Of a stretch of 64,000 bases of DNA, positions 1-64,000 are shown one piece after another; within the stretch, counting starts at the first letter, position 1; each line of letters starts with the position of its first letter. The stretch covers positions 58,962,001 through 59,026,000 of the forward strand of contig CM097882.1 of assembly GCA_044892505.1 (NCBI GenBank), in the 5' to 3' direction. The stretch comes from Schmidtea nova (lineage: Eukaryota). The position numbers were made by a program, and so were the translations under genes. The notes beneath the pieces were generated by a model, which saw nothing but the letters and a program-made list of their open reading frames with translations, was not told the DNA's origin and searched no databases.

Positions 1-169
1 GAAATAAAAAAAACATGATCGAATAAAATACTCTAAGAATATTAAATAAACCACAGATTTTCATATAATAAAATATTTCCAGTAAATTATTATTTTGTAA
101 TTTATTATTTTTTCTACACTTAAATTATGTTGATGTGAACAAACTAGGGAATAGTATTCCAAGTGTGGT

Positions 170-221
170 AATGATCATGATGAAATAATAATAATAAAAA
201 ATTAGTATTAATAATAATGAT
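170..221. repeat. Short (AAT)n-rich tract, once per unit
   Basis: AATGATCATGATGAAATAATAATAATAAAAAATTAGTATTAATAATAATGAT. Confidence 0.55.
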
Positions 222-601
222 AACGTCATTCTGCAGACTTGACATTCCATATTTATTCGTGGGTTTTCTCAATATTGCTCCTGGCACGTACACCAAAATC
301 TATTTTGAATCTGCGACATTTTGTGGACCTCTTAAGAAATTACAAAATGATTAAGCATAAAATATTTAACTTTAATATAAAATCGAACAGTGACATAAAG
401 TGAAAATCAAATAATAAAATAAAATACGTTAGAGATTAAAAAATATTTAAAAATAATTTTAAAATATTATTAAATATATTATTAAAATTTAATTATTTTT
501 TAATAAATTTTATTAATAAAAAACTTTAAAAGATCTTTAAAAAAGTGAAAGCTTTATGTTTTCTATTTAATTTTTATATTATATATTAAACAAACTTAAC
601 T

Positions 602-623
602 CTGGTAAGAAAAGAAGGTAAAT
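602..623 (+). promoter_or_regulatory. Candidate 5' splice donors (CTG|GTAAGA at 605; AAG|GTAAAT at 618), repeated in every unit
   Basis: Consensus-like donor motifs about 500 nt upstream of the acceptor. Such motifs also arise by chance in AT-rich DNA. Confidence 0.25.
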
Positions 624-800
624 TAATTGAAAGAAACCAAAACATATAATCAAAGAAAAATTGATAAAGATTGTTTACTAAACGATAGATTTTCATATAT
701 TAAAAGATTTGTTATAAATCTTTGCTTTGTTTTTATTAGTTTTGCATTTAACTTATGCCGCTAAGAAGAAATCACAAAATTCTAATCCAAATATGGAAAG

Positions 801-872
801 AATGATGTTGATGATAATAGTGATGAAAATATAATTATAATAATAATAACAATAAAAATAAAAAATAATAAG
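801..872. repeat. Degenerate (ATG/ATA/AAT)n low-complexity trinucleotide tract, once per unit
   Basis: AATGATGTTGATGATAATAGTGATGAAAATATAATTATAATAATAATAACAATAAAAATAAAAAATAATAAG. Confidence 0.6.
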
Positions 873-1087
873 AGTATAAACTTATTCAAATAATAAAACT
901 AATATTAATTTTAATAAATATTTATTCGTAAAAAATTAATTAAATATAATTCTAAAACATGTTAATTTATATTCTAAGTAATAGAATTTTTTTTTTATTT
1001 TTTTATGTAATTTCCACAAAGTCGTAATCTTTTGAATTAACAATATTATCTTTTTTTTTAATTTTCGAATCTTTTATTGGGTAGTAA

Positions 1088-1111
1088 TTCTTTTTTTCTT
1101 CTTATTCATAG
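1088..1111 (+). promoter_or_regulatory. Putative 3' splice acceptor (polypyrimidine tract + CATAG) 53 nt upstream of the Nup50 ATG; present in every unit
   Basis: TTCTTTTTTTTCTTCTTATTCATAG is a C/T-rich tract ending in AG at 1110-1111. It could be a 5'UTR intron acceptor or a trans-splice site; not testable without RNA. Confidence 0.45.
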
Positions 1112-1164
1112 CTATTTGATTGTTTATTTATAATTTATTTTAAAAAGCAAATTAATAATATAAA

Positions 1165-2268
1165 ATGAAACGCAACGCTACATCAGATATAAATCATACA
1201 AATTGGGATAAAGAAGAAGAAAAGGAAGAAAGAGGTGAATTTGTTACAGCAAATAAGAACATTATATCTCAACGAAAATTAATTTCAGCTAGAAGAAAAC
1301 CAACTTCAAATTCAACAAAAAATGTGTTTAAGTCATTTACTGGATTTTCCAGTACAGTCACTGAACCGTCTAAAAATACGTTTGGCACTATTCCTGACTC
1401 TAGCAACAGGGATAAAAACAAAGAAAAGCACATAAATTCACTGAAATTATTGAATAAAAAATTTCTTGAATGCATTCAAAAGCATATTAGTGAAAATCCA
1501 TTATGCGTCCTTACTCCTACACTGGAGGATTACAATAAAAACGTTGATATTATAAAAGAAAAATATCCTTTATCAACCATGTCATCAAATGTTACTGAAA
1601 CTGTATCAACATCATCGAGTACAAAACCAATTTTCAGTTTTCTAAAAGATGAAATTGAAACAGCTAATAAATTCGACTTTGGATTGAAAAATGTCGATGT
1701 TTCTAAACCATTCACTTTACCAACACAGTCTTCAACGGATAAAGTACCACATTTTGGATTACCTTCTACTTCGTCTGTAGATGTTAAAATCGCTTCGGTC
1801 GGATTTTCGAATAGTTCAAATAGTCTTTTCAGTTTTCCCGCTACTACAACATTGACACTTTTTGCGCCCAGCGCAGCACCTAAATGTAATGATGAAGAAG
1901 AAGAATATGTTCCTCCTGTCGCTGAAGTGCGCGAAGTTAAGGAAAAAGATTCGATTTATGAAGTTCGTTGTAAACTATTTTATCAAGTAGAGAGCAAATG
2001 GAAAAATCGTGGTGTTGGAAATTTGTTCATTAAACCTATAGAAAAAGGAAAGTTTCAACTTGTTCTTCGAGCTGATAATAGTCTTGCTACAATCATTTTA
2101 AATGTACTCATTAATGATAAGATGCCTCTAAGCGTAACAAAAAATAATCTTTCTTTTGTTGCCATGACAGACTTTTGCAAAGAAATAAAGTTGACTCCGT
2201 TGCTCATTCGTGTCAAAACTTCAGAAGAAGCAGAAGCTTTATTGGCAGCAATGAAACAACAGTTTTAG
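1165..2268 (+). CDS. Nup50: Nucleoporin Nup50-like protein, copy 1 (consensus protein, 367 aa)
   Basis: The N-terminus MKRNATSDINHTNWDKEEEKEERGEF...RKLISARRK matches the Nup50/Nup2 importin-alpha-binding region (human MAKRNAEKELTDRNWDQEDEAEEVGTF...KKAKRR, from memory). The central LNKKFLECIQKHISENPLCVLTPTLEDY matches the Nup50 NPLCDLTP motif. The C-terminal EVKEKDSIYEVRCKLFY..WKNRGVGNLFIK..QLVLRADNSLATIILNVLI..LLIRVKTSEEA is a Nup50-type RanBD/PH-like domain. Confidence 0.95.
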   Translation: MKRNATSDINHTNWDKEEEKEERGEFVTANKNIISQRKLISARRKPTSNSTKNVFKSFTGFSSTVTEPSKNTFGTIPDSSNRDKNKEKHINSLKLLNKKFLECIQKHISENPLCVLTPTLEDYNKNVDIIKEKYPLSTMSSNVTETVSTSSSTKPIFSFLKDEIETANKFDFGLKNVDVSKPFTLPTQSSTDKVPHFGLPSTSSVDVKIASVGFSNSSNSLFSFPATTTLTLFAPSAAPKCNDEEEEYVPPVAEVREVKEKDSIYEVRCKLFYQVESKWKNRGVGNLFIKPIEKGKFQLVLRADNSLATIILNVLINDKMPLSVTKNNLSFVAMTDFCKEIKLTPLLIRVKTSEEAEALLAAMKQQF

Positions 2269-4416: not shown

Positions 4417-5520
4417 ATGAAACGCAACGCTACATCAGATATAAATCATACAAATTGGGATAAAGAAGAAGAAAAGGAAGAAAGAGGTGAATTTGTTACA
4501 GCAAATAAGAACATTATATCTCAACGAAAATTAATTTCAGCTAGAAGAAAACCAACTTCAAATTCAACAAAAAATGTGTTTAAGTCATTTACTGGATTTT
4601 CCAGTACAGTCACTGAACCGTCTAAAAATACGTTTGGCACTATTCCTGACTCTAGCAACAGGGATAAAAACAAAGAAAAGCACATAAATTCACTGAAATT
4701 ATTGAATAAAAAATTTCTTGAATGCATTCAAAAGCATATTAGTGAAAATCCATTATGCGTCCTTACTCCTACACTGGAGGATTACAATAAAAACGTTGAT
4801 ATTATAAAAGAAAAATATCCTTTATCAACCATGTCATCAAATGTTACTGAAACTGTATCAACATCATCGAGTACAAAACCAATTTTCAGTTTTCTAAAAG
4901 ATGAAATTGAAACAGCTAATAAATTCGACTTTGGATTGAAAAATGTCGATGTTTCTAAACCATTCACTTTACCAACACAGTCTTCAACGGATAAAGTACC
5001 ACATTTTGGATTACCTTCTACTTCGTCTGTAGATGTTAAAATCGCTTCGGTCGGATTTTCGAATAGTTCAAATAGTCTTTTCAGTTTTCCCGCTACTACA
5101 ACATTGACACTTTTTGCGCCCAGCGCAGCACCTAAATGTAATGATGAAGAAGAAGAATATGTTCCGCCTGTCGCTGAAGTGCGCGAAGTTAAGGAAAAAG
5201 ATTCGATTTATGAAGTTCGTTGTAAACTATTTTATCAAGTAGAGAGCAAATGGAAAAATCGTGGTGTTGGAAATTTGTTCATTAAACCTATAGAAAAAGG
5301 AAAGTTTCAACTTGTTCTTCGAGCTGATAATAGTCTTGCTACAATCATTTTAAATGTACTCATTAATGATAAGATGCCTCTAAGCGTAACAAAAAATAAT
5401 CTTTCTTTTGTTGCCATGACAGACTTTTGCAAAGAAATAAAGTTGACTCCGTTGCTCATTCGTGTCAAAACTTCAGAAGAAGCAGAAGCTTTATTGGCAG
5501 CAATGAAACAACAGTTTTAG
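4417..5520 (+). CDS. Nup50: Nup50-like protein, copy 2 (consensus protein; synonymous P250 cct>ccg)
   Basis: Intact 367-aa ORF; protein identical to copy 1. Confidence 0.95.
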   Translation: MKRNATSDINHTNWDKEEEKEERGEFVTANKNIISQRKLISARRKPTSNSTKNVFKSFTGFSSTVTEPSKNTFGTIPDSSNRDKNKEKHINSLKLLNKKFLECIQKHISENPLCVLTPTLEDYNKNVDIIKEKYPLSTMSSNVTETVSTSSSTKPIFSFLKDEIETANKFDFGLKNVDVSKPFTLPTQSSTDKVPHFGLPSTSSVDVKIASVGFSNSSNSLFSFPATTTLTLFAPSAAPKCNDEEEEYVPPVAEVREVKEKDSIYEVRCKLFYQVESKWKNRGVGNLFIKPIEKGKFQLVLRADNSLATIILNVLINDKMPLSVTKNNLSFVAMTDFCKEIKLTPLLIRVKTSEEAEALLAAMKQQF

Positions 5521-7669
5521 ATTTTAAATATTATTATTTTTAAAATTTTTTTATTTTTATTTTTAATTTTAAACTTTTAATTAATTTTATGTACAATCAT
5601 CTATTAATTTTATAATTTGAAGTTTACTTCGTTTTGTTGTTTTATATTTTTTTTTATTACAAATAATTAATTATAATAAATTAATCAAAATACATGATAT
5701 TATATGATCCTGATTATATCAAATTTATTCTTTAAAAATTTCTTTAATAATATTTTTTAAAAACAGATTAGTTATTAATTTATCCAAGTTCTAAATTCAG
5801 TTTTTTAGATCAAGATCCAAATATAATTTGGAACATGCACATTTGCATCACTATTGATTGTATTGATGTTAGAGTGTTTTGGAAAGCTATTTTCTGTTCA
5901 TATTGGAATTATAATTTGCATATTAAACTTTGATAGATTATGTTTCCGTATTGTCAAAATTTAACAAGTCTTTTCTAGTCCAACAATTTCCTATAATCAC
6001 ATTTTGTTATTCACAACCAAATTTTTTGAAATATATTTTAATTACATTATTGTTTAGGCAAAGACGTAGGGCGACGAAAGCATGACTTGAACTATTTATC
6101 AGACGAGACGTCACTTGCATGATTTAATTATTTTATTTTAATGGCAATTCTTGTTCAGCAAGTAAAATGCCCCATCATTAGTTTTATTATAGTTTTTTAA
6201 ATTTAAGAGAGAAACCTAAGAAATTTAAGGTATTATTTGACAAAAAAAGAAAAATGTAAGTTAAAGCGAGGAAATCAATTTAAAGTTAAAAGTATTAAAG
6301 TAAGATAATGACAAACATGAGAATTTAGTATTATAATTTTAAAATATTTTAGTATAATTTTTTAAATAATTTTAAATAAAAGTAATTTCTTCAATTTTTA
6401 AATAACTTTAAAAAGTTTTGGTTTTAAGTTTCTTATTTTATTTTTATTTTTTAGATATTACATAAAAAAAAATTAGGCCAAAGAAGAAAAGATGATAATT
6501 TGATTGAAAGAAAAAAAACATGATCGAATAAAATACTCTAAGAATATTAAATAAACCACAGATTTTCATATAATAAAATATTTCCAGTAAATTATTATTT
6601 TGTAATTTATTATTGTTTCTACACTTAAATTATGTTGATGTGAACAAACTAGGGAATAGTATTCCAAGTGTGGTAATGATCATGATGAAATAATAATAAT
6701 AAAAAATTAGTATTAATAATAATGATAACGTCATTCTGCAGACTTGACATTCCATATTTATTCGTGGGTTTTCTCAATATTGCTCCTGGCACGTACACCA
6801 AAATCTATTTTGAATCTGCGACATTTTGTGGACCTCTTAAGAAATTACAAAATGATTAAGCATAAAATATTTAACTTTAATATAAAATCGAACAGTGACA
6901 TAAAGTGAAAATCAAATAATAAAATAAAATACGTTAGAGATTAAAAAATATTTAAAATTAATTTTAAAATATTATTAAATATATTATTAAAATTTAATTA
7001 TTTTTTAATAAATTTTATTAATAAAAAACTTTAAAAGATCTTTAAAAAATTGAAAGCTTTATGTTTTCTATTTAATTTTTATATTATATATTAAACAAAC
7101 TTAACTCTGGTAAGAAAAGAAGGTAAATTAATTGAAAGAAACCAAAACATATAATCAAAGAAAAATTGATAAAGATTGTTTACTAAACGATAGATTTCAT
7201 ATATTAAAAGATTTGTTATAAATCTTTGCTTTGTTTTTATTAGTTTTGCATTTAACTTATGCCGCTAAGAAGAAATCACGAAATTCTAATCCAAATATGG
7301 AAAGAATGATGTTGATGATAATAGTGATGAAAATAATAATTATAATAATAATAACAATAAAAATAAAAAATAATAAGAGTATAAACTTATTCAAATAATA
7401 AAACTAATATTAATTTTAATAAATATTTATTCGTAAAAAATTAATTAAATATAATTCTAAAACATGTTAATTTATATTCTAAGTAATAGAATTTTTTTTT
7501 TATTTTTTTTATGTTTTTCCACAAAGTCGTAATCTTTTGAATTAACAATATTATCTTTTTTTTTAATTTTCGAATCTTTTATTGGGTAGTAATTCTTTTT
7601 TTCTTCTTATTCATAGCTATTTGATTGTTTATTTATAATTTATTTTAAAAAGCAAATTAATAATATAAA

Positions 7670-8773
7670 ATGAAACGCAACGCTACATCAGATATAAATC
7701 ATACAAATTGGGATAAAGAAGAAGAAAAGGAAGAAAGAGGTGAATTTGTTACAGCAAATAAGAACATTATATCTCAACGAAAATTAATTTCAGCTAGAAG
7801 AAAACCAACTTCAAATTCAACAAAAAATGTGTTTAAGTCATTTACTGGATTTTCCAGTACAGTCACTGAACCGTCTAAAAATACGTTTGGCACTATTCCT
7901 GACTCTAGCAACAGGGATAAAAACAAAGAAAAGCACATAAATTCACTGAAATTATTGAATAAAAAATTTCTTGAATGCATTCAAAAGCATATTAGTGAAA
8001 ATCCATTATGCGTCCTTACTCCTACACTGGAGGATTACAATAAAAACGTTGATATTATAAAAGAAAAATATCCTTTATCAACCATGTCATCAAATGTTAC
8101 TGAAACTGTATCAACATCATCGAGTACAAAACCAATTTTCAGTTTTCTAAAAGATGAAATTGAAACAGCTAATAAATTCGACTTTGGATTGAAAAATGTC
8201 GATGTTTCTAAACCATTCACTTTACTAACACAGTCTTCAACGGATAAAGTACCACATTTTGGATTACCTTCTACTTCGTCTGTAGATGTTAAAATCGCTT
8301 CGGTCGGATTTTCGAATAGTTCAAATAGTCTTTTCAGTTTTCCCGCTACTACAACATTGACACTTTTTGCGCCCAGCGCAGCACCTAAATGTAATGATGA
8401 AGAAGAAGAATATGTTCCTCCTGTCGCTGAAGTGCGCGAAGTTAAGGAAAAAGATTCGATTTATGAAGTTCGTTGTAAACTATTTTATCAAGTAGAGAGC
8501 AAATGGAAAAATCGTGGTGTTGGAAATTTGTTCATTAAACCTATAGAAAAAGGAAAGTTTCAACTTGTTCTTCGAGCTGATAATAGTCTTGCTACAATCA
8601 TTTTAAATGTACTCATTAATGATAAGATGCCTCTAAGCGTAACAAAAAATAATCTTTCTTTTGTTGCCATGACAGACTTTTGCAAAGAAATAAAGTTGAC
8701 TCCGTTGCTCATTCGTGTCAAAAGTTCAGAAGAAGCAGAAGCTTTATTGGCAGCAATGAAACAACAGTTTTAG
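7670..8773 (+). CDS. Nup50: Nup50-like protein, copy 3 (P186L, T352S)
   Basis: Intact 367-aa ORF; variants read from the translation. Confidence 0.95.
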   Translation: MKRNATSDINHTNWDKEEEKEERGEFVTANKNIISQRKLISARRKPTSNSTKNVFKSFTGFSSTVTEPSKNTFGTIPDSSNRDKNKEKHINSLKLLNKKFLECIQKHISENPLCVLTPTLEDYNKNVDIIKEKYPLSTMSSNVTETVSTSSSTKPIFSFLKDEIETANKFDFGLKNVDVSKPFTLLTQSSTDKVPHFGLPSTSSVDVKIASVGFSNSSNSLFSFPATTTLTLFAPSAAPKCNDEEEEYVPPVAEVREVKEKDSIYEVRCKLFYQVESKWKNRGVGNLFIKPIEKGKFQLVLRADNSLATIILNVLINDKMPLSVTKNNLSFVAMTDFCKEIKLTPLLIRVKSSEEAEALLAAMKQQF

Positions 8774-10923: not shown

Positions 10924-12027
10924 ATGAAACGCAACGCTACATCAGATATAAATCATACAAATTGGGATAAAGAAGAAGAAAAGGAAGAAAGAGGTGAATT
11001 TGTTACAGCAAATAAGAACATTATATCTCAACGAAAATTAATTTCAGCTAGAAGAAAACCAACTTCAAATTCAACAAAAAATGTGTTTAAGTCATTTACT
11101 GGATTTTCCAGTACAGTCACTGAACCGTCTAAAAATACGTTTGGCACTATTCCTGACTCTAGCAACAGGGATAAAAACAAAGAAAAGCACATAAATTCAC
11201 TGAAATTATTGAATAAAAAATTTCTTGAATGCATTCAAAAGCATATTAGTGAAAATCCATTATGCGTCCTTACTCCTACACTGGAGGATTACAATAAAAA
11301 CGTTGATATTATAAAAGAAAAATATCCTTTATCAACCATGTCATCAAATGTTACTGAAACTGTATCAACATCATCGAGTACAAAACCAATTTTCAGTTTT
11401 CTAAAAGATGAAATTGAAACAGCTAATAAATTCGACTTTGGATTGAAAAATGTCGATGTTTCTAAACCATTCACTTTACCAACACAGTCTTCAACGGATA
11501 AAGTACCACATTTTGGATTACCTTCTACTTCGTCTGTAGATGTTAAAATCGCTTCGGTCGGATTTTCGAATAGTTCAAATAGTCTTTTCAGTTTTCCCGC
11601 TACTACAACATTGACACTTTTTGCGCCCAGCGCAGCACCTAAATGTAATGATGAAGAAGAAGAATATGTTCCTCCTGTCGCTGAAGTGCGCGAAGTTAAG
11701 GAAAAAGATTCGATTTATGAAGTTCGTTGTAAACTATTTTATCAAGTAGAGAGCAAATGGAAAAATCGTGGTGTTGGAAATTTGTTCATTAAACCTATAG
11801 AAAAAGGAAAGTTTCAACTTGTTCTTCGAGCTGATAATAGTCTTGCTACAATCATTTTAAATGTACTCATTAATGATAAGATGCCTCTAAGCGTAACAAA
11901 AAATAATCTTTCTTTTGTTGCCATGACAGACTTTTGCAAAGAAATAAAGTTGACTCCGTTGCTCATTCGTGTCAAAACTTCAGAAGAAGCAGAAGCTTTA
12001 TTGGCAGCAATGAAACAACAGTTTTAG
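10924..12027 (+). CDS. Nup50: Nup50-like protein, copy 4 (consensus protein)
   Basis: Intact 367-aa ORF. Confidence 0.95.
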   Translation: MKRNATSDINHTNWDKEEEKEERGEFVTANKNIISQRKLISARRKPTSNSTKNVFKSFTGFSSTVTEPSKNTFGTIPDSSNRDKNKEKHINSLKLLNKKFLECIQKHISENPLCVLTPTLEDYNKNVDIIKEKYPLSTMSSNVTETVSTSSSTKPIFSFLKDEIETANKFDFGLKNVDVSKPFTLPTQSSTDKVPHFGLPSTSSVDVKIASVGFSNSSNSLFSFPATTTLTLFAPSAAPKCNDEEEEYVPPVAEVREVKEKDSIYEVRCKLFYQVESKWKNRGVGNLFIKPIEKGKFQLVLRADNSLATIILNVLINDKMPLSVTKNNLSFVAMTDFCKEIKLTPLLIRVKTSEEAEALLAAMKQQF

Positions 12028-14174: not shown

Positions 14175-15278
14175 ATGAAACGCAACGCTACATCAGATAT
14201 AAATCATACAAATTGGGATAAAGAAGAAGAAAAGGAAGAAAGAGGTGAATTTGTTACAGCAAATAAGAACATTATATCTCAACGAAAATTAATTTCAGCT
14301 AGAAGAAAACCAACTTCAAATTCAACAAAAAATGTGTTTAAGTCATTTACTGGATTTTCCAGTACAGTCACTGAACCGTCTAAAAATACGTTTGGCACTA
14401 TTCCTGACTCTAGCAACAGGGATAAAAACAAAGAAAAGCACATAAATTCACTGAAATTATTGAATAAAAAATTTCTTGAATGCATTCAAAAGCATATTAG
14501 TGAAAATCCATTATGCGTCCTTACTCCTACACTAGAGGATTACAATAAAAACGTTGATATTATAAAAGAAAAATATCCTTTATCAACCATGTCATCAAAT
14601 GTTACTGAAACTGTATCAACATCATCGAGTACACAACCAATTTTCAGTTTTCTAAAAGATGAAATTGAAACAGCTAATAAATTCGACTTTGGATTGAAAA
14701 ATGTCGATGTTTCTAAACCATTCACTTTACCAACACAGTCTTCAACGGATAAAGTACCACATTTTGGATTACCTTCTACTTCGTCTGTAGATGATAAAAT
14801 CGCTTCGGTCGGATTTTCGAATAGTTCAAATAATCTTTTCAGTTTTCCCGCTACTACAACATTGACACTTTTTGCGCCCAGCGCAGCACCTAAATGTAAT
14901 GATGAAGAAGAAGAATATGTTCCTCCTGTCGCTGAAGTGCGCGAAGTTAAGGAAAAAGATTCGATTTATGAAGTTCGTTGTAAACTATTTTATCAAGTAG
15001 AGAGCAAATGGAAAAATCGTGGTGTTGGAAATTTGTTCATTAAACCTATAGAAAAAGGAAAGTTTCAACTTGTTCTTCGAGCTGATAATAGTCTTGCTAC
15101 AATCATTTTAAATGTACTCATTAATGATAAGATGCCTCTAAGCGTAACAAAAAATAATCTTTCTTTTGTTGCCATGACAGACTTTTGCAAAGAAATAAAG
15201 TTGACTCCGTTGCTCATTCGTGTCAAAACTTCAGAAGAAGCAGAAGCTTTATTGGCAGCAATGAAACAACAGTTTTAG
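14175..15278 (+). CDS. Nup50: Nup50-like protein, copy 5 (K154Q, V207D, S220N)
   Basis: Intact 367-aa ORF; also synonymous L120 ctg>cta. Confidence 0.95.
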   Translation: MKRNATSDINHTNWDKEEEKEERGEFVTANKNIISQRKLISARRKPTSNSTKNVFKSFTGFSSTVTEPSKNTFGTIPDSSNRDKNKEKHINSLKLLNKKFLECIQKHISENPLCVLTPTLEDYNKNVDIIKEKYPLSTMSSNVTETVSTSSSTQPIFSFLKDEIETANKFDFGLKNVDVSKPFTLPTQSSTDKVPHFGLPSTSSVDDKIASVGFSNSSNNLFSFPATTTLTLFAPSAAPKCNDEEEEYVPPVAEVREVKEKDSIYEVRCKLFYQVESKWKNRGVGNLFIKPIEKGKFQLVLRADNSLATIILNVLINDKMPLSVTKNNLSFVAMTDFCKEIKLTPLLIRVKTSEEAEALLAAMKQQF

Positions 15279-46695: not shown

Positions 46696-47799
46696 ATGAA
46701 ACGCAACGCTACATCAGATATAAATCATACAAATTGGGATAAAGAAGAAGAAAAGGAAGAAAGAGGTGAATTTGTTACAGCAAATAAGAACATTATATCT
46801 CAACGAAAATTAATTTCAGCTAGAAGAAAACCAACTTCAAATTCAACAAAAAATGTGTTTAAGTCATTTACTGGATTTTCCAGTACAGTCACTGAACCGT
46901 CTAAAAATACGTTTGGCACTATTCCTGACTCTAGCAACAGGGATAAAAACAAAGAAAAGCACATAAATTCACTGAAATTATTGAATAAAAAATTTCTTGA
47001 ATGCATTCAAAAGCAAATTAGTGAAAATCCATTATGCGTCCTTACTCCTACACTGGAGGATTACAATAAAAACGTTGATATTATAAAAGAAAAATATCCT
47101 TTATCAACCATGTCATCAAATGTTACTGAAACTGTATCAACATCATCGAGTACAAAACCAATTTTCAGTTTTCTAAAAGATGAAATTGAAACAGCTAATA
47201 AATTCGACTTTGGATTGAAAAATGTCGATGTTTCTAAACCATTCACTTTACCAACACAGTCTTCAACGGATAAAGTACCACATTTTGGATTACCTTCTAC
47301 TTCGTCTGTAGATGTTAAAATCGCTTCGGTCGGATTTTCGAATAGTTCAAATAGTCTTTTCAGTTTTCCCGCTACTACAACATTGACACTTTTTGCGCCC
47401 AGCGCAGCACCTAAATGTAATGATGAAGAAGAAGAATATGTTCCTCCTGTCGCTGAAGTGCGCGAAGTTAAGGAAAAAGATTCGATTTATGAAGTTCGTT
47501 GTAAACTATTTTATCAAGTAGAGAGCAAATGGAAAAATCGTGGTGTTGGAAATTTGTTCATTAAACCTATAGAAAAAGGAAAGTTTCAACTTGTTCTTCG
47601 AGCTGATAATAGTCTTGCTACAATCATTTTAAATGTACTCATTAATGATAAGATGCCTCTAAGCGTAACAAAAAATAATCTTTCTTTTGTTGCCATGACA
47701 GACTTTTGCAAAGAAATAAAGTTGACTCCGTTGCTCATTCGTGTCAAAACTTCAGAAGAAGCAGAAGCTTTATTGGCAGCAATGAAACAACAGTTTTAG
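46696..47799 (+). CDS. Nup50: Nup50-like protein, copy 15 (H107Q)
   Basis: Intact 367-aa ORF. Confidence 0.95.
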   Translation: MKRNATSDINHTNWDKEEEKEERGEFVTANKNIISQRKLISARRKPTSNSTKNVFKSFTGFSSTVTEPSKNTFGTIPDSSNRDKNKEKHINSLKLLNKKFLECIQKQISENPLCVLTPTLEDYNKNVDIIKEKYPLSTMSSNVTETVSTSSSTKPIFSFLKDEIETANKFDFGLKNVDVSKPFTLPTQSSTDKVPHFGLPSTSSVDVKIASVGFSNSSNSLFSFPATTTLTLFAPSAAPKCNDEEEEYVPPVAEVREVKEKDSIYEVRCKLFYQVESKWKNRGVGNLFIKPIEKGKFQLVLRADNSLATIILNVLINDKMPLSVTKNNLSFVAMTDFCKEIKLTPLLIRVKTSEEAEALLAAMKQQF

Positions 47800-49948: not shown

Positions 49949-51052
49949 ATGAAACGCAACGCTACATCAGATATAAATCATACAAATTGGGATAAAGAAG
50001 AAGAAAAGGAAGAAAGAGGTGAATTTGTTACAGCAAATAAGAACATTATATCTCAACGAAAATTAATTTCAGCTAGAAGAAAACCAACTTCAAATTCAAC
50101 AAAAAATGTGTTTAAGTCATTTACTGGATTTTCCAGTACAGTCACTGAACCGTCTAAAAATACGTTTGGCACTATTCCTGACTCTAGCAACAGGGATAAA
50201 AACAAAGAAAAGCACATAAATTCACTGAAATTATTGAATAAAAAATTTCTTGAATGCATTCAAAAGCATATTAGTGAAAATCCATTATGCGTCCTTACTC
50301 CTACACTGGAGGATTACAATAAAAACGTTGATATTATAAAAGAAAAATATCCTTTATCAACCATGTCATCAAATGTTACTGAAACTGTATCAACATCATC
50401 GAGTACAAAACCAATTTTCAGTTTTCTAAAAGATGAAATTGAAACAGCTAATAAATTCGACTTTGGATTGAAAAATGTCGATGTTTCTAAACCATTCACT
50501 TTACCAACACAGTCTTCAACGGATAAAGTACCACATTTTGGATTACCTTCTACTTCGTCTGTAGATGTTAAAATCGCTTCGGTCGGATTTTCGAATAGTT
50601 CAAATAGTCTTTTCAGTTTTCCCGCTACTACAACATTGACACTTTTTGCGCCCAGCGCAGCACCTAAATGTAATGATGAAGAAGAAGAATATGTTCCTCC
50701 TGTCGCTGAAGTGCGCGAAGTTAAGGAAAAAGATTCGATTTATGAAGTTCGTTGTAAACTATTTTATCAAGTAGAGAGCAAATGGAAAAATCGTGGTGTT
50801 GGAAATTTGTTCATTAAACCTATAGAAAAAGGAAAGTTTCAACTTGTTCTTCGAGCTGATAATAGTCTTGCTACAATCATTTTAAATGTACTCATTAATG
50901 ATAAGATGCCTCTAAGCGTAACAAAAAATAATCTTTCTTTTGTTGCCATGACAGACTTTTGCAAAGAAATAAAGTTGACTCCGTTGCTCATTCGTGTCAA
51001 AACTTCAGAAGAAGCAGAAGCTTTATTGGCAGCAATGAAACAACAGTTTTAG
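49949..51052 (+). CDS. Nup50: Nup50-like protein, copy 16 (consensus protein)
   Basis: Intact 367-aa ORF. Confidence 0.95.
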   Translation: MKRNATSDINHTNWDKEEEKEERGEFVTANKNIISQRKLISARRKPTSNSTKNVFKSFTGFSSTVTEPSKNTFGTIPDSSNRDKNKEKHINSLKLLNKKFLECIQKHISENPLCVLTPTLEDYNKNVDIIKEKYPLSTMSSNVTETVSTSSSTKPIFSFLKDEIETANKFDFGLKNVDVSKPFTLPTQSSTDKVPHFGLPSTSSVDVKIASVGFSNSSNSLFSFPATTTLTLFAPSAAPKCNDEEEEYVPPVAEVREVKEKDSIYEVRCKLFYQVESKWKNRGVGNLFIKPIEKGKFQLVLRADNSLATIILNVLINDKMPLSVTKNNLSFVAMTDFCKEIKLTPLLIRVKTSEEAEALLAAMKQQF

Positions 51053-53201: not shown

Positions 53202-54305
53202 ATGAAACGCAACGCTACATCAGATATAAATCATACAAATTGGGATAAAGAAGAAGAAAAGGAAGAAAGAGGTGAATTTGTTACAGCAAATAAGAACATT
53301 ATATCTCAACGAAAATTAATTTCAGCTAGAAGAAAACCAACTTCAAATTCAACAAAAAATGTGTTTAAGTCATTTACTGGATTTTCCAGTACAGTCACTG
53401 AACCGTCTAAAAATACGTTTGGCACTATTCCTGACTCTAGCAACAGGGATAAAAACAAAGAAAAGCACATAAATTCACTGAAATTATTGAATAAAAAATT
53501 TCTTGAATGCATTCAAAAGCATATTAGTGAAAATCCATTATGCGTCCTTACTCCTACACTGGAGGATTACAATAAAAACGTTGATATTATAAAAGAAAAA
53601 TATCCTTTATCAACCATGTCATCAAATGTTACTGAAACTGTATCAACATCATCGAGTACAAAACCAATTTTCAGTTTTCTAAAAGATGAAATTGAAACAG
53701 CTAATAAATTCGACTTTGGATTGAAAAATGTCGATGTTTCTAAACCATTCACTTTACCAACACAGTCTTCAACGGATAAAGTACCACATTTTGGATTACC
53801 TTCTACTTCGTCTGTAGATGTTAAAATCGCTTCGGTCGGATTTTCGAATAGTTCAAATAGTCTTTTCAGTTTTCCCGCTACTACAACATTGACACTTTTT
53901 GCGCCCAGCGCAGCACCTAAATGTAATGATGAAGAAGAAGAATATGTTCCTCCTGTCGCTGAAGTGCGCGAAGTTAAGGAAAAAGATTCGATTTATGAAG
54001 TTCGTTGTAAACTATTTTATCAAGTAGAGAGCAAATGGAAAAATCGTGGTGTTGGAAATTTGTTCATTAAACCTATAGAAAAAGGAAAGTTTCAACTTGT
54101 TCTTCGAGCTGATAATAGTCTTGCTACAATCATTTTAAATGTACTCATTAATGATAAGATGCCTCTAAGCGTAACAAAAAATAATCTTTCTTTTGTTGCC
54201 ATGACAGACTTTTGCAAAGAAATAAAGTTGACTCCGTTGCTCATTCGTGTCAAAAGTTCAGAAGAAGCAGAAGCTTTATTGGCAGCAATGAAACAACAGT
54301 TTTAG
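53202..54305 (+). CDS. Nup50: Nup50-like protein, copy 17 (T352S)
   Basis: Intact 367-aa ORF. Confidence 0.95.
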   Translation: MKRNATSDINHTNWDKEEEKEERGEFVTANKNIISQRKLISARRKPTSNSTKNVFKSFTGFSSTVTEPSKNTFGTIPDSSNRDKNKEKHINSLKLLNKKFLECIQKHISENPLCVLTPTLEDYNKNVDIIKEKYPLSTMSSNVTETVSTSSSTKPIFSFLKDEIETANKFDFGLKNVDVSKPFTLPTQSSTDKVPHFGLPSTSSVDVKIASVGFSNSSNSLFSFPATTTLTLFAPSAAPKCNDEEEEYVPPVAEVREVKEKDSIYEVRCKLFYQVESKWKNRGVGNLFIKPIEKGKFQLVLRADNSLATIILNVLINDKMPLSVTKNNLSFVAMTDFCKEIKLTPLLIRVKSSEEAEALLAAMKQQF

Positions 54306-56451: not shown

Positions 56452-57555
56452 ATGAAACGCAACGCTACATCAGATATAAATCATACAAATTGGGATAAAG
56501 AAGAAGAAAAGGAAGAAAGAGGTGAATTTGTTACAGCAAATAAGAACATTATATCTCAACGAAAATTAATTTCAGCTAGAAGAAAACCAACTTCAAATTC
56601 AACAAAAAATGTGTTTAAGTCATTTACTGGATTTTCCAGTACAGTCACTGAACCGTCTAAAAATACGTTTGGCACTATTCCTGACTCTAGCAACAGGGAT
56701 AAAAACAAAGAAAAGCACATAAATTCACTGAAATTATTGAATAAAAAATTTCTTGAATGCATTCAAAAGCATATTAGTGAAAATCCATTATGCGTCCTTA
56801 CTCCTACACTGGAGGATTACAATAAAAACGTTGATATTATAAAAGAAAAATATCCTTTATCAACCATGTCATCAAATGTTACTGAAACTGTATCAACATC
56901 ATCGAGTACAAAACCAATTTTCAGTTTTCTAAAAGATGAAATTGAAACAGCTAATAAATTCGACTTTGGATTAAAAAATGTCGATGTTTCTAAACCATTC
57001 ATTTTACTAACACAGTCTTCAACGGATAAAGTACCACATTTTGGATTACCTTCTACTTCGTCTGTAGATGTTAAAATCGCTTCGGTCGGATTTTCGAATA
57101 GTTCAAATAGTCTTTTCAGTTTTCCCGCTACTACAACATTGACACTTTTTGCGCCCAGCGCAGCACCTAAATGTAATGATGAAGAAGAAGAATATGTTCC
57201 TCCTGTCGCTGAAGTGCGCGAAGTTAAGGAAAAAGATTCGATTTATGAAGTTCGTTGTAAACTATTTTATCAAGTAGAGAGCAAATGGAAAAATCGTGGT
57301 GTTGGAAATTTGTTCATTAAACCTATAGAAAAAGGAAAGTTTCAACTTGTTCTTCGAGCTGATAATAGTCTTGCTACAATCATTTTAAATGTACTCATTA
57401 ATGATAAGATGCCTCTAAGCGTAACAAAAAATAATCTTTCTTTTGTTGCCATGACAGACTTTTGCAAAGAAATAAAGTTGACTCCGTTGCTCATTCGTGT
57501 CAAAAGTTCAGAAGAAGCAGAAGCTTTATTGGCAGCAATGAAACAACAGTTTTAG
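56452..57555 (+). CDS. Nup50: Nup50-like protein, copy 18 (T184I, P186L, T352S)
   Basis: Intact 367-aa ORF; also synonymous L174 ttg>tta. Confidence 0.95.
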   Translation: MKRNATSDINHTNWDKEEEKEERGEFVTANKNIISQRKLISARRKPTSNSTKNVFKSFTGFSSTVTEPSKNTFGTIPDSSNRDKNKEKHINSLKLLNKKFLECIQKHISENPLCVLTPTLEDYNKNVDIIKEKYPLSTMSSNVTETVSTSSSTKPIFSFLKDEIETANKFDFGLKNVDVSKPFILLTQSSTDKVPHFGLPSTSSVDVKIASVGFSNSSNSLFSFPATTTLTLFAPSAAPKCNDEEEEYVPPVAEVREVKEKDSIYEVRCKLFYQVESKWKNRGVGNLFIKPIEKGKFQLVLRADNSLATIILNVLINDKMPLSVTKNNLSFVAMTDFCKEIKLTPLLIRVKSSEEAEALLAAMKQQF

Positions 57556-59704: not shown

Positions 59705-60808
59705 ATGAAACGCAACGCTACATCAGATATAAATCATACAAATTGGGATAAAGAAGAAGAAAAGGAAGAAAGAGGTGAATTTGTTACAGCAAATAAGAAC
59801 ATTATATCTCAACGAAAATTAATTTCAGCTAGAAGAAAACCAACTTCAAATTCAACAAAAAATGTGTTTAAGTCATTTACTGGATTTTCCAGTACAGTCA
59901 CTGAACCGTCTAAAAATACGTTTGGCACTATTCCTGACTCTAGCAACAGGGATAAAAACAAAGAAAAGCACATAAATTCACTGAAATTATTGAATAAAAA
60001 ATTTCTTGAATGCATTCAAAAGCATATTAGTGAAAATCCATTATGCGTCCTTACTCCTACACTGGAGGATTACAATAAAAACGTTGATATTATAAAAGAA
60101 AAATATCCTTTATCAACCATGTCATCAAATGTTACTGAAACTGTATCAACATCATCGAGTACAAAACCAATTTTCAGTTTTCTAAAAGATGAAATTGAAA
60201 CAGCTAATAAATTCGACTTTGGATTGAAAAATGTCGATGTTTCTAAACCATTCACTTTACCAACACAGTCTTCAACGGATAAAGTACCACATTTTGGATT
60301 ACCTTCTACTTCGTCTGTAGATGTTAAAATCGCTTCGGTCGGATTTTCGAATAGTTCAAATAGTCTTTTCAGTTTTCCCGCTACTACAACATTGACACTT
60401 TTTGCGCCCAGCGCAGCACCTAAATGTAATGATGAAGAAGAAGAATATGTTCCTCCTGTCGCTGAAGTGCGCGAAGTTAAGGAAAAAGATTCGATTTATG
60501 AAGTTCGTTGTAAACTATTTTATCAAGTAGAGAGCAAATGGAAAAATCGTGGTGTTGGAAATTTGTTCATTAAACCTATAGAAAAAGGAAAGTTTCAACT
60601 TGTTCTTCGAGCTGATAATAGTCTTGCTACAATCATTTTAAATGTACTCATTAATGATAAGATGCCTCTAAGCGTAACAAAAAATAATCTTTCTTTTGTT
60701 GCCATGACAGACTTTTGCAAAGAAATAAAGTTGACTCCGTTGCTCATTCGTGTCAAAAGTTCAGAAGAAGCAGAAGCTTTATTGGCAGCAATGAAACAAC
60801 AGTTTTAG
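59705..60808 (+). CDS. Nup50: Nup50-like protein, copy 19 (T352S)
   Basis: Intact 367-aa ORF; same protein as copy 17. Confidence 0.95.
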   Translation: MKRNATSDINHTNWDKEEEKEERGEFVTANKNIISQRKLISARRKPTSNSTKNVFKSFTGFSSTVTEPSKNTFGTIPDSSNRDKNKEKHINSLKLLNKKFLECIQKHISENPLCVLTPTLEDYNKNVDIIKEKYPLSTMSSNVTETVSTSSSTKPIFSFLKDEIETANKFDFGLKNVDVSKPFTLPTQSSTDKVPHFGLPSTSSVDVKIASVGFSNSSNSLFSFPATTTLTLFAPSAAPKCNDEEEEYVPPVAEVREVKEKDSIYEVRCKLFYQVESKWKNRGVGNLFIKPIEKGKFQLVLRADNSLATIILNVLINDKMPLSVTKNNLSFVAMTDFCKEIKLTPLLIRVKSSEEAEALLAAMKQQF

Positions 60809-62954
60809 ATTTTAAATATTATTATTTTTAAAATTTTTTTATTTTTATTTTTAATTTTAAACTTTTAATTAATTTTATGTACAATCATCTATTAATTTTA
60901 TAATTTGAAGTTTACTTCGTTTTGTTGTTTTATATTTTTTTTTATTACAAATAATTAATTATAATAAATTAATCAAAATACATGATATTATATGATCCTG
61001 ATTATATCAAATTTATTCTTTAAAAATTTCTTTAATATTTTTTAAAAACAGATTAGTTATTAATTTATCCAAGTTCTAAATTCAGTTTTTTAGATCAAGA
61101 TCCAAATATAATTTGGAACATGCACATTTGCATCACTATTGATTGTATTGATGTTAGAGTGTTTTGGAAAGCTATTTTCTGTTCATATTGGAATTATAAT
61201 TTGCATATTAAACTTTGATAGATTATGTTTCCGTATTGTCAAAATTTAACAAGTCTTTTCTAGTCCAACAATTTCCTATAATCACATTTTGTTATTCACA
61301 ACCAAATTTTTTGAAATATATTTTAATTACATTATTGTTTAGGCAAAGACGTAGGGCGACGAAAGCATGACTTGAACTATTTATCAGACGAGACGTCACT
61401 TGCATGATTTAATTATTTTATTTTAATGGCAATTCTTGTTCAGCAAGCAAAATGCCCCATCATTAGTTTTATTATAGTTTTTTATATTTAAGAGAGAAAC
61501 CTAAGAAATTTAAGGTATTATTTGACAAAAAAAGAAAAATGTAAGTTAAAGCGAGGAAATCAATTTAAAGTTAAAAGTATTAAAGTAAGATAATGACAAA
61601 CATGAGAATTTAGTATTATAATTTTAAAATATTTTAGTATAATTTTTTAAATAATTTTAAATAAAAGTAATTTCTTCAATTTTTAAATAACTTTAAAAAG
61701 TTTTGGTTTTAAGTTTCTTATTTTATTTTTATTTTTTAGATATTACATAAAAAAAAATTAGGCCAAATAAGAAAAGATGATAATTTGATTGAAAGAAAAA
61801 AAACATGATCGAATAAAATACTCTAAGAATATTAAATAAACCACAGATTTTCATATAATAAAATATTTCCAGTAAATTATTATTTTGTAATTTATTATTG
61901 TTTCTACACTTAAATTATGTTGATGTGAACAAACTAGGGAATAGTATTCCAAGTGTGGTAATGATCATGATGAAATAATAATAATAAAAAATTAGTATTA
62001 ATAATAATGATAACGTCATTCTGCAGACTTGACATTCCATATTTATTCGTGGGTTTTCTCAATATTGCTCCTGGCACGTACACCAAAATCTATTTTGAAT
62101 CTGCGACATTTTGTGGACCTCTTAAGAAATTACAAAATGATTAAGCATAAAATATTTAACTTTAATATAAAATCGAACAGTGACATAAAGTGAAAATCAA
62201 ATAATAAAATAAAATACGTTAGAGATTAAAAAATATTTAAAAATAATTTTAAAATATTATTAAATATATTATTAAAATTTAATTATTTTTTAATAAATTT
62301 TATTAATAAAAAACTTTAAAAGATCTTTAAAAAATTGAAAGCTTTATGTTTTCTATTTAATTTTTATATTATATATTAAACAAACTTAACTCTGGTAAGA
62401 AAAGAAGGTAAATTAATTGAAAGAAACCAAAACATATAATCAAAGAAAAATTGATAAAGATTGTTTACTAAACGATAGATTTTCATATATTAAAAGATTT
62501 GTTATAAATCTTTGCTTTGTTTTTATTAGTTTTGCATTTAACTTATGCCGCTAAGAAGAAATCACAAAATTCTAATCCAAATATGGAAAGAATGATGTTG
62601 ATGATAATAGTGATGAAAATATAATTATAATAATAATAACAATAAAAATAAAAAATAATAAGAGTATAAACTTATTCAAATAATAAAACTAATATTAATT
62701 TTAATAAATATTTATTCGTAAAAAATTAATTAAATATAATTCTAAAACATGTTAATTTATATTCTAAGTAATAGAATTTTTTTTTTATTTTTTTTATGTT
62801 TTTCCACAAAGTCGTAATCTTTTGAATTAACAATATTATCTTTTTTTTTAATTTTCGAATCTTTTATTGGGTAGTAATTCTTTTTTTCTTCTTATTCATA
62901 GCTATTTGATTGTTTATTTATAATTTATTTTAAAAAGCAAATTAATAATATAAA

Positions 62955-64000
62955 ATGAAACGCAACGCTACATCAGATATAAATCATACAAATTGGGATA
63001 AAGAAGAAGAAAAGGAAGAAAGAGGTGAATTTGTTACAGCAAATAAGAACATTATATCTCAACGAAAATTAATTTCAGCTAGAAGAAAACCAACTTCAAA
63101 TTCAACAAAAAATGTGTTTAAGTCATTTACTGGATTTTCCAGTACAGTCACTGAACCGTCTAAAAATACGTTTGGCACTATTCCTGACTCTAGCAACAGG
63201 GATAAAAACAAAGAAAAGCACATAAATTCACTGAAATTATTGAATAAAAAATTTCTTGAATGCATTCAAAAGCATATTAGTGAAAATCCATTATGCGTCC
63301 TTACTCCTACACTGGAGGATTACAATAAAAACGTTGATATTATAAAAGAAAAATATCCTTTATCAACCATGTCATCAAATGTTACTGAAACTGTATCAAC
63401 ATCATCGAGTACAAAACCAATTTTCAGTTTTCTAAAAGATGAAATTGAAACAGCTAATAAATTCGACTTTGGATTGAAAAATGTCGATGTTTCTAAACCA
63501 TTCATTTTACTAACACAGTCTTCAACGGATAAAGTACCACATTTTGGATTACCTTCTACTTCGTCTGTAGATGTTAAAATCGCTTCGGTCGGATTTTCGA
63601 ATAGTTCAAATAGTCTTTTCAGTTTTCCCGCTACTACAACATTGACACTTTTTGCGCCCAGCGCAGCACCTAAATGTAATGATGAAGAAGAAGAATATGT
63701 TCCTCCTGTCGCTGAAGTGCGCGAAGTTAAGGAAAAAGATTCGATTTATGAAGTTCGTTGTAAACTATTTTATCAAGTAGAGAGCAAATGGAAAAATCGT
63801 GGTGTTGGAAATTTGTTCATTAAACCTATAGAAAAAGGAAAGTTTCAACTTGTTCTTCGAGCTGATAATAGTCTTGCTACAATCATTTTAAATGTACTCA
63901 TTAATGATAAGATGCCTCTAAGCGTAACAAAAAATAATCTTTCTTTTGTTGCCATGACAGACTTTTGCAAAGAAATAAAGTTGACTCCGTTGCTCATTCG
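62955..64000 (+). CDS. Nup50: Nup50-like protein, copy 20 (T184I, P186L), 3' end cut by the window edge
   Basis: ATG at 62955 in the same TAAAATGAAACGC context. The frame is open to the window end (...LTPLLIR). It is absent from the ORF track because no stop falls inside the window. Confidence 0.93.
   Translation, partial: MKRNATSDINHTNWDKEEEKEERGEFVTANKNIISQRKLISARRKPTSNSTKNVFKSFTGFSSTVTEPSKNTFGTIPDSSNRDKNKEKHINSLKLLNKKFLECIQKHISENPLCVLTPTLEDYNKNVDIIKEKYPLSTMSSNVTETVSTSSSTKPIFSFLKDEIETANKFDFGLKNVDVSKPFILLTQSSTDKVPHFGLPSTSSVDVKIASVGFSNSSNSLFSFPATTTLTLFAPSAAPKCNDEEEEYVPPVAEVREVKEKDSIYEVRCKLFYQVESKWKNRGVGNLFIKPIEKGKFQLVLRADNSLATIILNVLINDKMPLSVTKNNLSFVAMTDFCKEIKLTPLLI

What the first reader, a model, noticed from the sequence alone, without database searches (positions are those of the whole stretch)
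1..64000. Ampliconic tandem array of at least 20 near-identical Nup50 nucleoporin genes
Seen: 20 head-to-tail copies, 18 of the 19 complete ones with intact ORFs, and the array runs off both ends. Established: Nup50/Nup2 is a mobile nuclear-basket nucleoporin that binds importin-alpha and RanGTP and is normally single- or low-copy. Homogenised arrays of this kind are typical of histones, rRNA, snRNA and selfish or testis amplicons, not nucleoporins. Inference: a recent, large, concertedly evolving amplification of a nuclear-import regulator. I know of no described Nup50 array, but could not search for one.
Basis: partly seen in the sequence, partly recalled or inferred. Interest (0 to 1): 0.88.

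Follow-up and report, generated by a model that had tools for sequence, protein, structure and literature searches.

The report
Tandem array of intact Nup50 genes
A flatworm chromosome carries at least 20 nearly identical head-to-tail copies of a complete, intron-free gene for the nuclear-pore protein Nup50, normally a one- or two-copy gene; the array looks real, young and still protein-coding, but whether the copies are used was not shown.

Summary
The whole window is one head-to-tail array with a 3,249-3,254 bp period and 20 start codons. It holds 19 complete 367-codon reading frames, 18 of them intact; unit 11 has a stop at codon 44. The array runs off both ends of the window.

The protein is a full-length Nup50: NUP50 N-terminal domain, conserved central helices, three FG dipeptides and a Ran-binding domain whose best structural match is human NUP50 bound to Ran. 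Its closest relatives are flatworm Nup50s (77%, 56%, then under 48% identity). It keeps 49 of 50 residues invariant in those relatives and shows no rate acceleration.

Units differ by 0.55% on average. Unit types run AAABCD-AAABBBCDD-EAEA, so multi-unit blocks were duplicated, which argues against a simple assembly artefact. Amino-acid-changing differences are about half the neutral expectation (p about 0.006).

The gene has no introns, whereas the Schistosoma orthologue has several. That fits a processed-copy origin, but no poly(A) remnant was found.

Not shown: true copy number, expression, or a separate parental locus. No paper describing a Nup50 array turned up.

The parts
1..64000 (+). 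Tandem array, 19 whole units plus partial units at both ends; period 3,249-3,254 bp
1..1164 (+). Spacer tail of a unit whose gene lies before the window
   Evidence: same small ORFs and sequence as the other spacers
1165..2268 (+). Unit 1 Nup50 CDS, 367 aa, intact, consensus protein (also units 2, 4, 10, 16)
1165..1353 (+). Unit 1: NUP50 N-terminal (importin-alpha-binding) domain, aa 1-63
   Evidence: PF08911, 55.6 bits; 3tj3_C, 2c1m_B
1441..1539 (+). Unit 1: conserved central block aa 93-125 (invariant L96 N97 L101 H107 P112 C114 P118 D122 Y123); probably the pore-binding region
   Evidence: function inferred from PMC8634129
1942..2253 (+). Unit 1: Ran-binding domain, aa 260-363
   Evidence: 7mo0_B, TM 0.80, 41% identity
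2423..2428 (+). AATAAA, candidate polyadenylation signal 155 nt after the stop codon (same offset in every unit)
   Evidence: use not shown
4417..5520 (+). Unit 2 CDS, intact
6322..6729 (+). Unit 2 spacer: first copy of an old internal duplication of about 410 bp (69% identity)
6955..7355 (+). Unit 2 spacer: second copy of the old internal duplication
7670..8773 (+). Unit 3 CDS, intact (P186L, T352S)
10924..12027 (+). Unit 4 CDS, intact
14175..15278 (+). Unit 5 CDS, intact (K154Q, V207D, S220N)
17426..18529 (+). Unit 6 CDS, intact but H107Q at a family-invariant residue
20679..21782 (+). Unit 7 CDS, intact but P345L at a family-invariant residue
23932..25035 (+). Unit 8 CDS, intact but P345L
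27184..28287 (+). Unit 9 CDS, intact; whole unit is 1 substitution from unit 3
30438..31541 (+). Unit 10 CDS, intact
33688..34791 (+). Unit 11 CDS, broken: stop at codon 44 (33817-33819), plus Q105R and I264N
36937..38040 (+). Unit 12 CDS, intact (K99R, T144P, T352S)
40188..41291 (+). Unit 13 CDS, intact (K154Q)
43442..44545 (+). Unit 14 CDS, intact but H107Q
46696..47799 (+). Unit 15 CDS, intact but H107Q
49949..51052 (+). Unit 16 CDS, intact
53202..54305 (+). Unit 17 CDS, intact (T352S); whole unit has no substitution differences from unit 19
56452..57555 (+). Unit 18 CDS, intact (T184I, P186L, T352S)
59705..60808 (+). Unit 19 CDS, intact (T352S)
62955..64000 (+). Unit 20 CDS, first 348 codons, open, cut by the window end

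Best explanation
This is a real, young tandem amplification of a complete, self-contained Nup50 gene in a flatworm, most likely a triclad planarian. Each 3.25-kb unit holds about 2.15 kb of AT-rich spacer, presumably with a promoter, then an intron-free 1,104-bp reading frame and an AATAAA 155 nt after the stop. The founder was either the species' own Nup50 orthologue or a very recent copy of it. With no introns, it probably descends from a processed mRNA copy. The array grew by unequal exchange in registers of 1, 2, 6 and 8 units, not by one-at-a-time homogenisation. Most copies can still make a normal Nup50. That protein would release import cargo from importin-alpha through its N-terminus, dock at the pore basket through the central helices and FG motifs, and bind RanGTP through its C-terminal domain. 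The likely effect is a higher Nup50 dose, perhaps for dividing stem cells, where the Schmidtea gene is enriched and needed for regeneration. Shown here: array anatomy, family membership, intactness, block duplication and a deficit of amino-acid changes. Inferred: promoter, transcription, dosage effect, cell type and retrocopy origin.
For: Array anatomy. Family: Pfam NUP50 and Ran_BP1 above cut-off; PDB sequence hits to human Nup50 RanBD (5e-24) and the N-terminal peptide; the model's RanBD has pLDDT 87-93 and best matches 7mo0_B at TM 0.80. Orthologue-like: full-length alignment to P0001 (77%) and P0002 (56%), with nothing else above 47% among 1.84 billion representatives; 18:18 unique changes against P0001 with P0002 as outgroup; 49 of 50 invariant columns kept, the best of all seven sequences. 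Copies are distinct and ordered: type string AAABCDAAABBBCDDEAEA, with nearest relatives 3~9 (1 difference), 6~14 (3) and 17=19 (0). Constraint: 13 non-synonymous against 9 synonymous variable sites, where the spacer mutation spectrum predicts 26.9 and 5.4 (p=0.006); no indels in the CDS against 9 events in the spacer. Derived loss of introns: the S. japonicum Nup50 gene spans 7.3 kb with at least 3 introns. Abundance: four runs of only 265-350 Mb each hold 88-89% of the unit's 31-mers, spacer included. Biology of the relative: Smed-nup50 is neoblast-enriched and its RNAi impairs regeneration (PMC4494696). Nup50 also promotes post-mitotic pore assembly through RCC1 (PMC8634129).
Against: There is no expression evidence: no RNA run holds the unit and no matching transcript or protein is in the collections. 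Copy number rests on one assembly, and the four runs come from one study that may be the assembly's own source. Six of 19 copies carry a stop or a change at a family-invariant residue (R44*, H107Q in 3 units, P345L in 2), so individual copies are drifting. The selection test rests on 22 sites, and the low-complexity spacer may simply mutate faster. No poly(A) remnant was found to support a retrocopy origin. This genome holds many tandem arrays (291 scan notes), so amplification may be a neutral habit of the genome.
Confidence: 0.55

Rival explanations
1. Neutral or transient copy-number expansion. A recent processed copy of Nup50 landed in repeat-prone DNA and was multiplied by unequal exchange. 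The copies are silent or irrelevant, and the working Nup50 gene, with introns, lies elsewhere.
For: The gene has no introns whereas the trematode orthologue has several. The array is very young (0.55%), so intact frames need little selection. One nonsense event among 22 variable sites matches the neutral expectation of 5-8%. Six of 19 copies carry likely damaging changes. The spacer contains an older internal duplication. The genome is rich in tandem arrays.
Against: Non-synonymous variation is about half the expectation from the spacer spectrum (p=0.006). There are no frameshifts in 20 copies. The consensus is the best-conserved sequence in the family alignment, with no rate acceleration. Neither protein search found a second, more divergent planarian Nup50 type, although this species is absent from those collections.
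Confidence: 0.25
2. Conflict-driven amplicon. The copies are amplified in an arms race, either as germline drive or its suppression acting on nuclear transport, or as a dose-dependent counter to the genome's active virus-like retroelements that must cross the pore.
For: The array has ampliconic-type identity, above 99%. Nuclear-transport genes duplicate repeatedly through RNA intermediates in Drosophila, in connection with meiotic drive (PMC8645118). Unchecked scan notes report very recent giant Gypsy elements and one with FxFG nucleoporin-like repeats fused to Gag in this genome.
Against: There is no sign of fast or adaptive protein change: 18:18 relative rate, 49 of 50 invariant residues kept, and a deficit rather than an excess of amino-acid variants among copies. 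There are no expression or sex- or germline-linkage data. Planarians are hermaphrodites with no known sex chromosomes (general knowledge).
Confidence: 0.1
3. Assembly artefact. A few true copies were inflated into a long array by the assembler.
For: All evidence comes from one assembly, read laying failed, and the array reaches both window ends.
Against: There are 17 distinct unit sequences among 19, and the variants are shared in an ordered block pattern rather than as identical repeats or random errors. Period jitter is limited to a few homopolymer indels. Very small runs (265-350 Mb, for a genome with one chromosome over 450 Mb) still recover 88-89% of the unit's words in assembled contigs. 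That needs many copies if they are shotgun DNA; this rests on my recollection that Logan keeps only words seen at least twice.
Confidence: 0.07

Closest known systems
Nup50 / Npap60 / yeast Nup2 (nuclear-basket import cofactor)
   Same: Same domain order: N-terminal importin-alpha-binding NUP50 domain, central conserved helices, FG dipeptides and a C-terminal Ran-binding domain. Best sequence and structure matches are human NUP50.
   Different: It is shorter (367 aa; the NUP50 domain boundaries used in the solved human structures imply a longer protein, from my own knowledge about 468 aa), has only three FG dipeptides, has no introns, and is present in at least 20 tandem copies rather than one or two.
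Smed-nup50 of Schmidtea mediterranea (KM981941; PMC4494696)
   Same: It is probably the orthologue. P0001 (365 aa, 77% identical, full length) is most likely this protein, judging from its UniParc number and date; that is my inference. The Schmidtea gene is neoblast-enriched and needed for regeneration.
   Different: The Schmidtea gene is reported as one gene. Its copy number and intron content could not be examined here.
Rodent Nup50B / Nup50rel (1700123L14Rik), an expressed second Nup50 locus (PMC8634129)
   Same: It is a second Nup50 locus, annotated as a pseudogene yet expressed, and able to replace Nup50 in pore assembly. This is a precedent for a functional extra Nup50 copy.
   Different: It is a single dispersed copy, about 60% identical to the parent, with altered pore binding. 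It is not a homogeneous tandem array.
Retroduplicated nuclear-transport genes of Drosophila (Ntf-2r, Ran-like, importin-alpha copies; PMC8645118)
   Same: These are intron-free duplicates of nuclear-transport components arising through RNA intermediates.
   Different: They are one or a few dispersed, fast-evolving, male-biased copies. That paper's text does not contain the word Nup50, and no rapid evolution is seen here.
Ampliconic gene families and housekeeping gene arrays (mammalian X/Y amplicons; histone, rRNA and snRNA arrays)
   Same: Many head-to-tail or clustered copies at 97% identity or more, with multi-unit duplication.
   Different: The gene class differs, since a nucleoporin has not been reported in such arrays. 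There is no evidence of sex linkage, testis expression or long-term conservation of the array.

Membership tests
Nup50/Nup2 nucleoporin | N-terminal NUP50 domain (PF08911) with the basic start that binds importin-alpha | tested here: met
   55.6 bits against a cut-off of 22.5, aa 1-63. PDB hits 3tj3_C and 2c1m_B. M1 K2 R3 N13 W14 R37 are invariant among flatworm relatives.
Nup50/Nup2 nucleoporin | C-terminal Ran-binding domain (PF00638) with a RanBD fold | tested here: met
   44.1 bits against a cut-off of 23.2. 7mo0_B at E=5e-24. Model pLDDT is 87-93 over aa 260-367, and the best fold match is the NUP50 RanBD-Ran complex, TM 0.80.
Nup50/Nup2 nucleoporin | Conserved central region that binds Nup153 and ELYS and docks the protein at the pore (Xenopus aa 144-189, PMC8634129) | tested here: inconclusive
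   A strongly conserved block at aa 93-125, with nine invariant residues including a D-Y pair, lies in predicted helices 79-133. I did not align it to the Xenopus segment.
Nup50/Nup2 nucleoporin | FG repeats in a disordered middle part | tested here: met
   FG at residues 73, 172 and 197, all in stretches with pLDDT below 50. This is fewer than in vertebrate Nup50.
Nup50/Nup2 nucleoporin | Binds importin-alpha and RanGTP and sits at the nuclear basket | not testable with these tools
   Needs biochemistry and localisation.
Processed retrogene | Lacks the introns of the parental or orthologous gene | tested here: met
   The reading frame is a single 1,104-bp ORF. The S. japonicum orthologue spans 7.3 kb in at least 4 coding blocks.
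Processed retrogene | Poly(A) remnant after the 3' end and flanking target-site duplications | tested here: not met
   There is no A-run after AATAAA (+155) or ATTAAA (+402). Target-site duplications cannot be defined inside an array. The AT-rich spacer would hide an old tail.
Processed retrogene | A separate intron-bearing parental locus | not testable with these tools
   No tool searches the rest of this genome, and scan notes hold no other Nup50.
Ampliconic (conflict or testis-type) gene family | Many copies at 97% identity or more | tested here: met
   At least 20 copies at 99.45% mean identity.
Ampliconic (conflict or testis-type) gene family | Germline or testis-restricted expression | not testable with these tools
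Ampliconic (conflict or testis-type) gene family | Rapid or adaptive protein evolution | tested here: not met
   Relative rate is 18:18, 49 of 50 invariant residues are kept, and non-synonymous variation is in deficit.
Concertedly evolving housekeeping array (histone or rDNA type) | Head-to-tail complete gene units, highly homogeneous | tested here: met
Concertedly evolving housekeeping array (histone or rDNA type) | Array conserved across related species while copies stay homogeneous within each species | not testable with these tools
   No related genome was available. Relatives are seen only as single protein records.

The most novel reading that the evidence does not exclude
The array is a selected, expressed dose amplifier of a nuclear-import and pore-assembly factor. 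It would have been driven either by the demands of planarian stem cells or by conflict with the genome's active, virus-like retroelements or a germline drive system acting on nuclear transport. That would make it the first nucleoporin known to be kept as a homogenised multi-copy array.
Probability: 0.15. Interest if true: 0.85.

Novelty: new variant of a known kind. Interest (0 to 1): 0.55.

Why it matters
Nucleoporins are textbook low-copy housekeeping genes, and their stoichiometry in the pore is tightly fixed. Nup50 is the mobile exception. It tunes cargo release from importin-alpha and also stimulates RCC1 during post-mitotic pore assembly, so its dose could plausibly be a target of selection.

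An array of at least 20 near-identical, mostly intact copies would offer a natural experiment on how much Nup50 a cell tolerates or needs. The animal's biology depends on constantly dividing stem cells, in which the Schmidtea gene is enriched. It would also be a new test case for the idea that nuclear-transport genes are hot spots of duplication under genetic conflict.

If the copies prove silent, the array is instead a clean, datable example of how a processed gene copy can be swept up into a macro-repeat.

Tried and rejected
- **Tandem Repeats Finder** found nothing because its longest period is 500 bp. I used anchor matching instead.
There is therefore no read depth, joint or expression evidence.
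- The Rfam, tRNA and repeat scans were limited to 2340-5520 or 2340-4416. Sandbox scripts computed statistics on the earlier whole-unit alignment, and one compared a unit against itself. No outside database was involved and those letters were not printed.
- **Exact-protein look-ups** for the window protein and for P0001 found nothing. A search with the N-terminal 130 aa found no near-identical fragments.
- **Spacer content.** There was no Rfam family at E up to 1, no tRNA, and no Pfam hit for the four small spacer ORFs. A second gene or RNA gene in the unit was rejected.
- **Scan notes** near the window, by sequence and by the word Nup50 were blank.
- **Literature.** Searches for a Nup50 or nucleoporin array, planarian gene amplification and Nup50 paralogues found no description of such an array. 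Two planarian comparative-genome papers do not mention Nup50 or tandem gene arrays.
- **Identity of P0001.** The supplement of PMC4494696 holds no Smed-nup50 sequence, so P0001 = Smed-nup50 remains an inference.
- **Retroposition hallmark.** A poly(A) remnant was sought and not found.


Full report
**1.

- A 30-nt anchor at the start codon occurs exactly 20 times on the + strand, spaced 3,249-3,254 bp apart.
- ORF listing gives 18 ORFs of 367 aa, plus a 314-aa remainder in unit 11.
- Unit 11 has a single AGA>TGA change at codon 44, at 33817-33819.
- The twentieth copy is open for 348 codons until the window ends. Bases 1-1164 are the spacer tail of a further unit.
- Tandem Repeats Finder was blank only because its longest period is 500 bp.
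- The window has no N and is 24% G+C. The CDS is 33% G+C and the spacer 19%.

**2. What the gene is**

- Pfam gives NUP50 (aa 1-63, 55.6 bits, cut-off 22.5) and Ran_BP1 (aa 260-363, 44.1 bits, cut-off 23.2).
- The best solved-structure relatives are the human NUP50 Ran-binding domain (7mo0_B, E=5e-24) and the NUP50 N-terminal peptide bound to importin-alpha (3tj3_C, 2c1m_B).
- An AlphaFold model built on a seven-sequence alignment folds aa 260-367 with pLDDT 87-93. It predicts helices at 79-133 and leaves the rest disordered, as expected for an FG nucleoporin.
- Foldseek ranks the NUP50 RanBD-Ran complex first, with TM 0.80 and 41% identity.
- FG dipeptides lie at residues 73, 172 and 197.
- A conserved central block at aa 93-125 has nine invariant residues. 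It probably corresponds to the 46-residue region that docks Nup50 to Nup153 and ELYS in Xenopus (PMC8634129). I did not align the two, so this is inferred.

**3. Whose gene it is**

- The closest proteins are P0001 (365 aa, 77% identity, full length) and P0002 (387 aa, 56%). Next come trematode Nup50s and others at 47% or below. This holds both in the word-indexed search and in an exhaustive HMMER scan of 1.84 billion representatives.
- P0001 is a lone UniParc record. I take it to be Smed-nup50 (KM981941) from its accession and date, which is an inference.
- Three things point to a triclad planarian that is not represented in the protein collections: these relatives, the low G+C, and the scan's notes of giant Gypsy elements with a chromosome over 450 Mb.
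- The arrayed gene behaves like the ordinary orthologue:
  - It has the same length and architecture.
  - A relative-rate test against P0001, with P0002 as outgroup, gives 18:18 unique changes.
  - It keeps 49 of the 50 columns that are invariant in the other six sequences, the best score in a leave-one-out comparison.

**4. No introns**

The reading frame is uninterrupted. The Schistosoma japonicum orthologue spans 7.3 kb, and its protein aligns in at least four separated blocks, two of the breaks falling in the Ran-binding domain.

Loss of all introns at once is the usual mark of a processed mRNA copy (established knowledge). However, I found no poly(A) remnant after AATAAA (+155) or ATTAAA (+402), and target-site duplications cannot be defined inside an array. 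I could not tell whether the intron loss predates the planarian radiation or is recent.

**5. How the array is built**

- Across 19 whole units, 87 of 3,256 columns vary. Mean pairwise difference is 18 substitutions (0.55%), with a range of 0-32.
- Nearest relatives are mostly not neighbours:

| Unit pair | Substitution differences |
|---|---|
| 3 ~ 9 | 1 |
| 6 ~ 14 | 3 |
| 16 ~ 18 | 4 |
| 17 = 19 | 0 |
| 4 ~ 10 | 8 |
| 5 ~ 13 | 11 |

- Clustering gives the order AAABCD AAABBBCDD EAEA.
- My reading is that a block of about six units (about 19.5 kb) was duplicated, single units within it were then multiplied, and a two-unit block was repeated at the 3' side.
- That is the signature of unequal exchange in several registers. 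It also argues against an assembler simply repeating a unit, since 17 distinct unit sequences appear in an ordered pattern.
- The spacer holds an older internal duplication of about 410 bp at 69% identity. It contains no Rfam family, tRNA or Pfam-recognisable ORF.

**6. Are the copies under selection?**

- The CDS has 22 variable sites: 13 non-synonymous (one of them a stop) and 9 synonymous.
- With Nei-Gojobori site counts, omega is about 0.39 (p=0.036).
- Using the mutation spectrum of the spacer, the CDS should show 32.3 variable sites, 26.9 of them non-synonymous and 5.4 synonymous. The observed 13:9 departs from that ratio with p=0.006.
- There are no indels in the CDS and nine events in the spacer, but most of those lie in homopolymers, which the CDS largely lacks.
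- Against this, one nonsense event in 22 is what neutrality predicts. H107Q (units 6, 14, 15) and P345L (units 7, 8) hit residues that are invariant in all relatives.
- My reading is that the gene as a whole is, or very recently was, under purifying selection, while single copies are redundant and starting to decay.

**7. Independent data**

Their assembled contigs hold 88-89% of the unit's sampled 31-mers, spacer included.
- If these are shotgun DNA from a genome of well over 1 Gb, such recovery needs tens of copies. This assumes, from my own recollection, that Logan keeps only words seen at least twice. The runs may also be the assembly's own source, so the support is weak.
- I then kept that 67-nt stretch and its equivalents in other units out of every search tool. 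Only closed-sandbox statistics touched whole units.
- As a result, copy number by depth, multi-unit reads and expression are untested.

**8. Mechanism**

Most likely (0.55), this is a real, young amplification of a working Nup50 gene, in which each unit is its own transcription unit and the effect is a higher Nup50 dose.

Nup50 releases cargo from importin-alpha, binds RanGTP, and stimulates RCC1 for post-mitotic pore assembly (PMC8634129). In Schmidtea the gene is enriched in the dividing neoblast fraction (45.3 against 8.9 and 0.86 in the digital expression table), and its RNAi impairs regeneration (PMC4494696). A link to stem-cell proliferation is therefore plausible but inferred.

Rival explanations:

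| Rival | Confidence |
|---|---|
| Silent, neutral macro-repeat built on a retrocopy | 0.25 |
| Conflict-driven amplicon | 0.10 |
| Assembly inflation | 0.07 |

The conflict idea has thematic precedent in Drosophila nuclear-transport retrogenes (PMC8645118). It also fits the unchecked scan notes of active virus-like Gypsy elements, one with nucleoporin-like FG repeats. The protein, however, shows no rapid evolution.

**9. Novelty**

No paper in the library describes a Nup50 or other nucleoporin tandem array. Two planarian comparative-genome papers do not mention it.

The closest precedents are the expressed second Nup50 locus of rodents (PMC8634129), which is a single diverged copy, and ampliconic or housekeeping arrays of other gene classes.

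I rate it a new variant of a known kind: tandem gene amplification, but of an unexpected gene. Interest is 0.55. The finding is unusual and easy to test, but function, expression and true copy number are unproven, and this genome is generally rich in tandem arrays.

Noticed in passing
window 6322-6729 and 6955-7355 (same offsets in every unit): The spacer contains two diverged copies (69% identity, about 630 bp apart) of a segment of about 410 bp. This duplication is older than the array itself, so the founder locus already lay in locally repeated DNA.
   Followed up: partly
window 17746, 43762, 47016 (codon 107 of units 6, 14, 15) and 21712, 24965 (codon 345 of units 7, 8): H107Q and P345L change residues that are invariant in all six flatworm and other relatives. 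H107 lies in the conserved central block that probably docks Nup50 at the pore. These copies may encode altered or weakened proteins.
   Followed up: partly
window 49949-64000 (units 16-20): The 3' part of the window is a two-unit higher-order repeat (types E A E A E). Units 17 and 19 have no substitution differences, so this is the youngest part of the array.
   Followed up: yes
It was left out of all later searches.
   Followed up: no
L002 6001-13307 (Schistosoma japonicum CM038285.1): The trematode Nup50 gene has one very small intron (about 35 nt) and one of about 5.3 kb. A 14-nt gap between the first two tblastn blocks may be an alignment overlap rather than an intron.
   Followed up: no
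L001 1-1256 (Logan contig of SRR21676451): A 1,256-nt contig carries the full 387-aa Nup50 of another flatworm, with a 25-nt leader and a 67-nt trailer containing AATAAA. It is either a transcript or another intron-free gene. The organism and library type are unknown to me.
   Followed up: no
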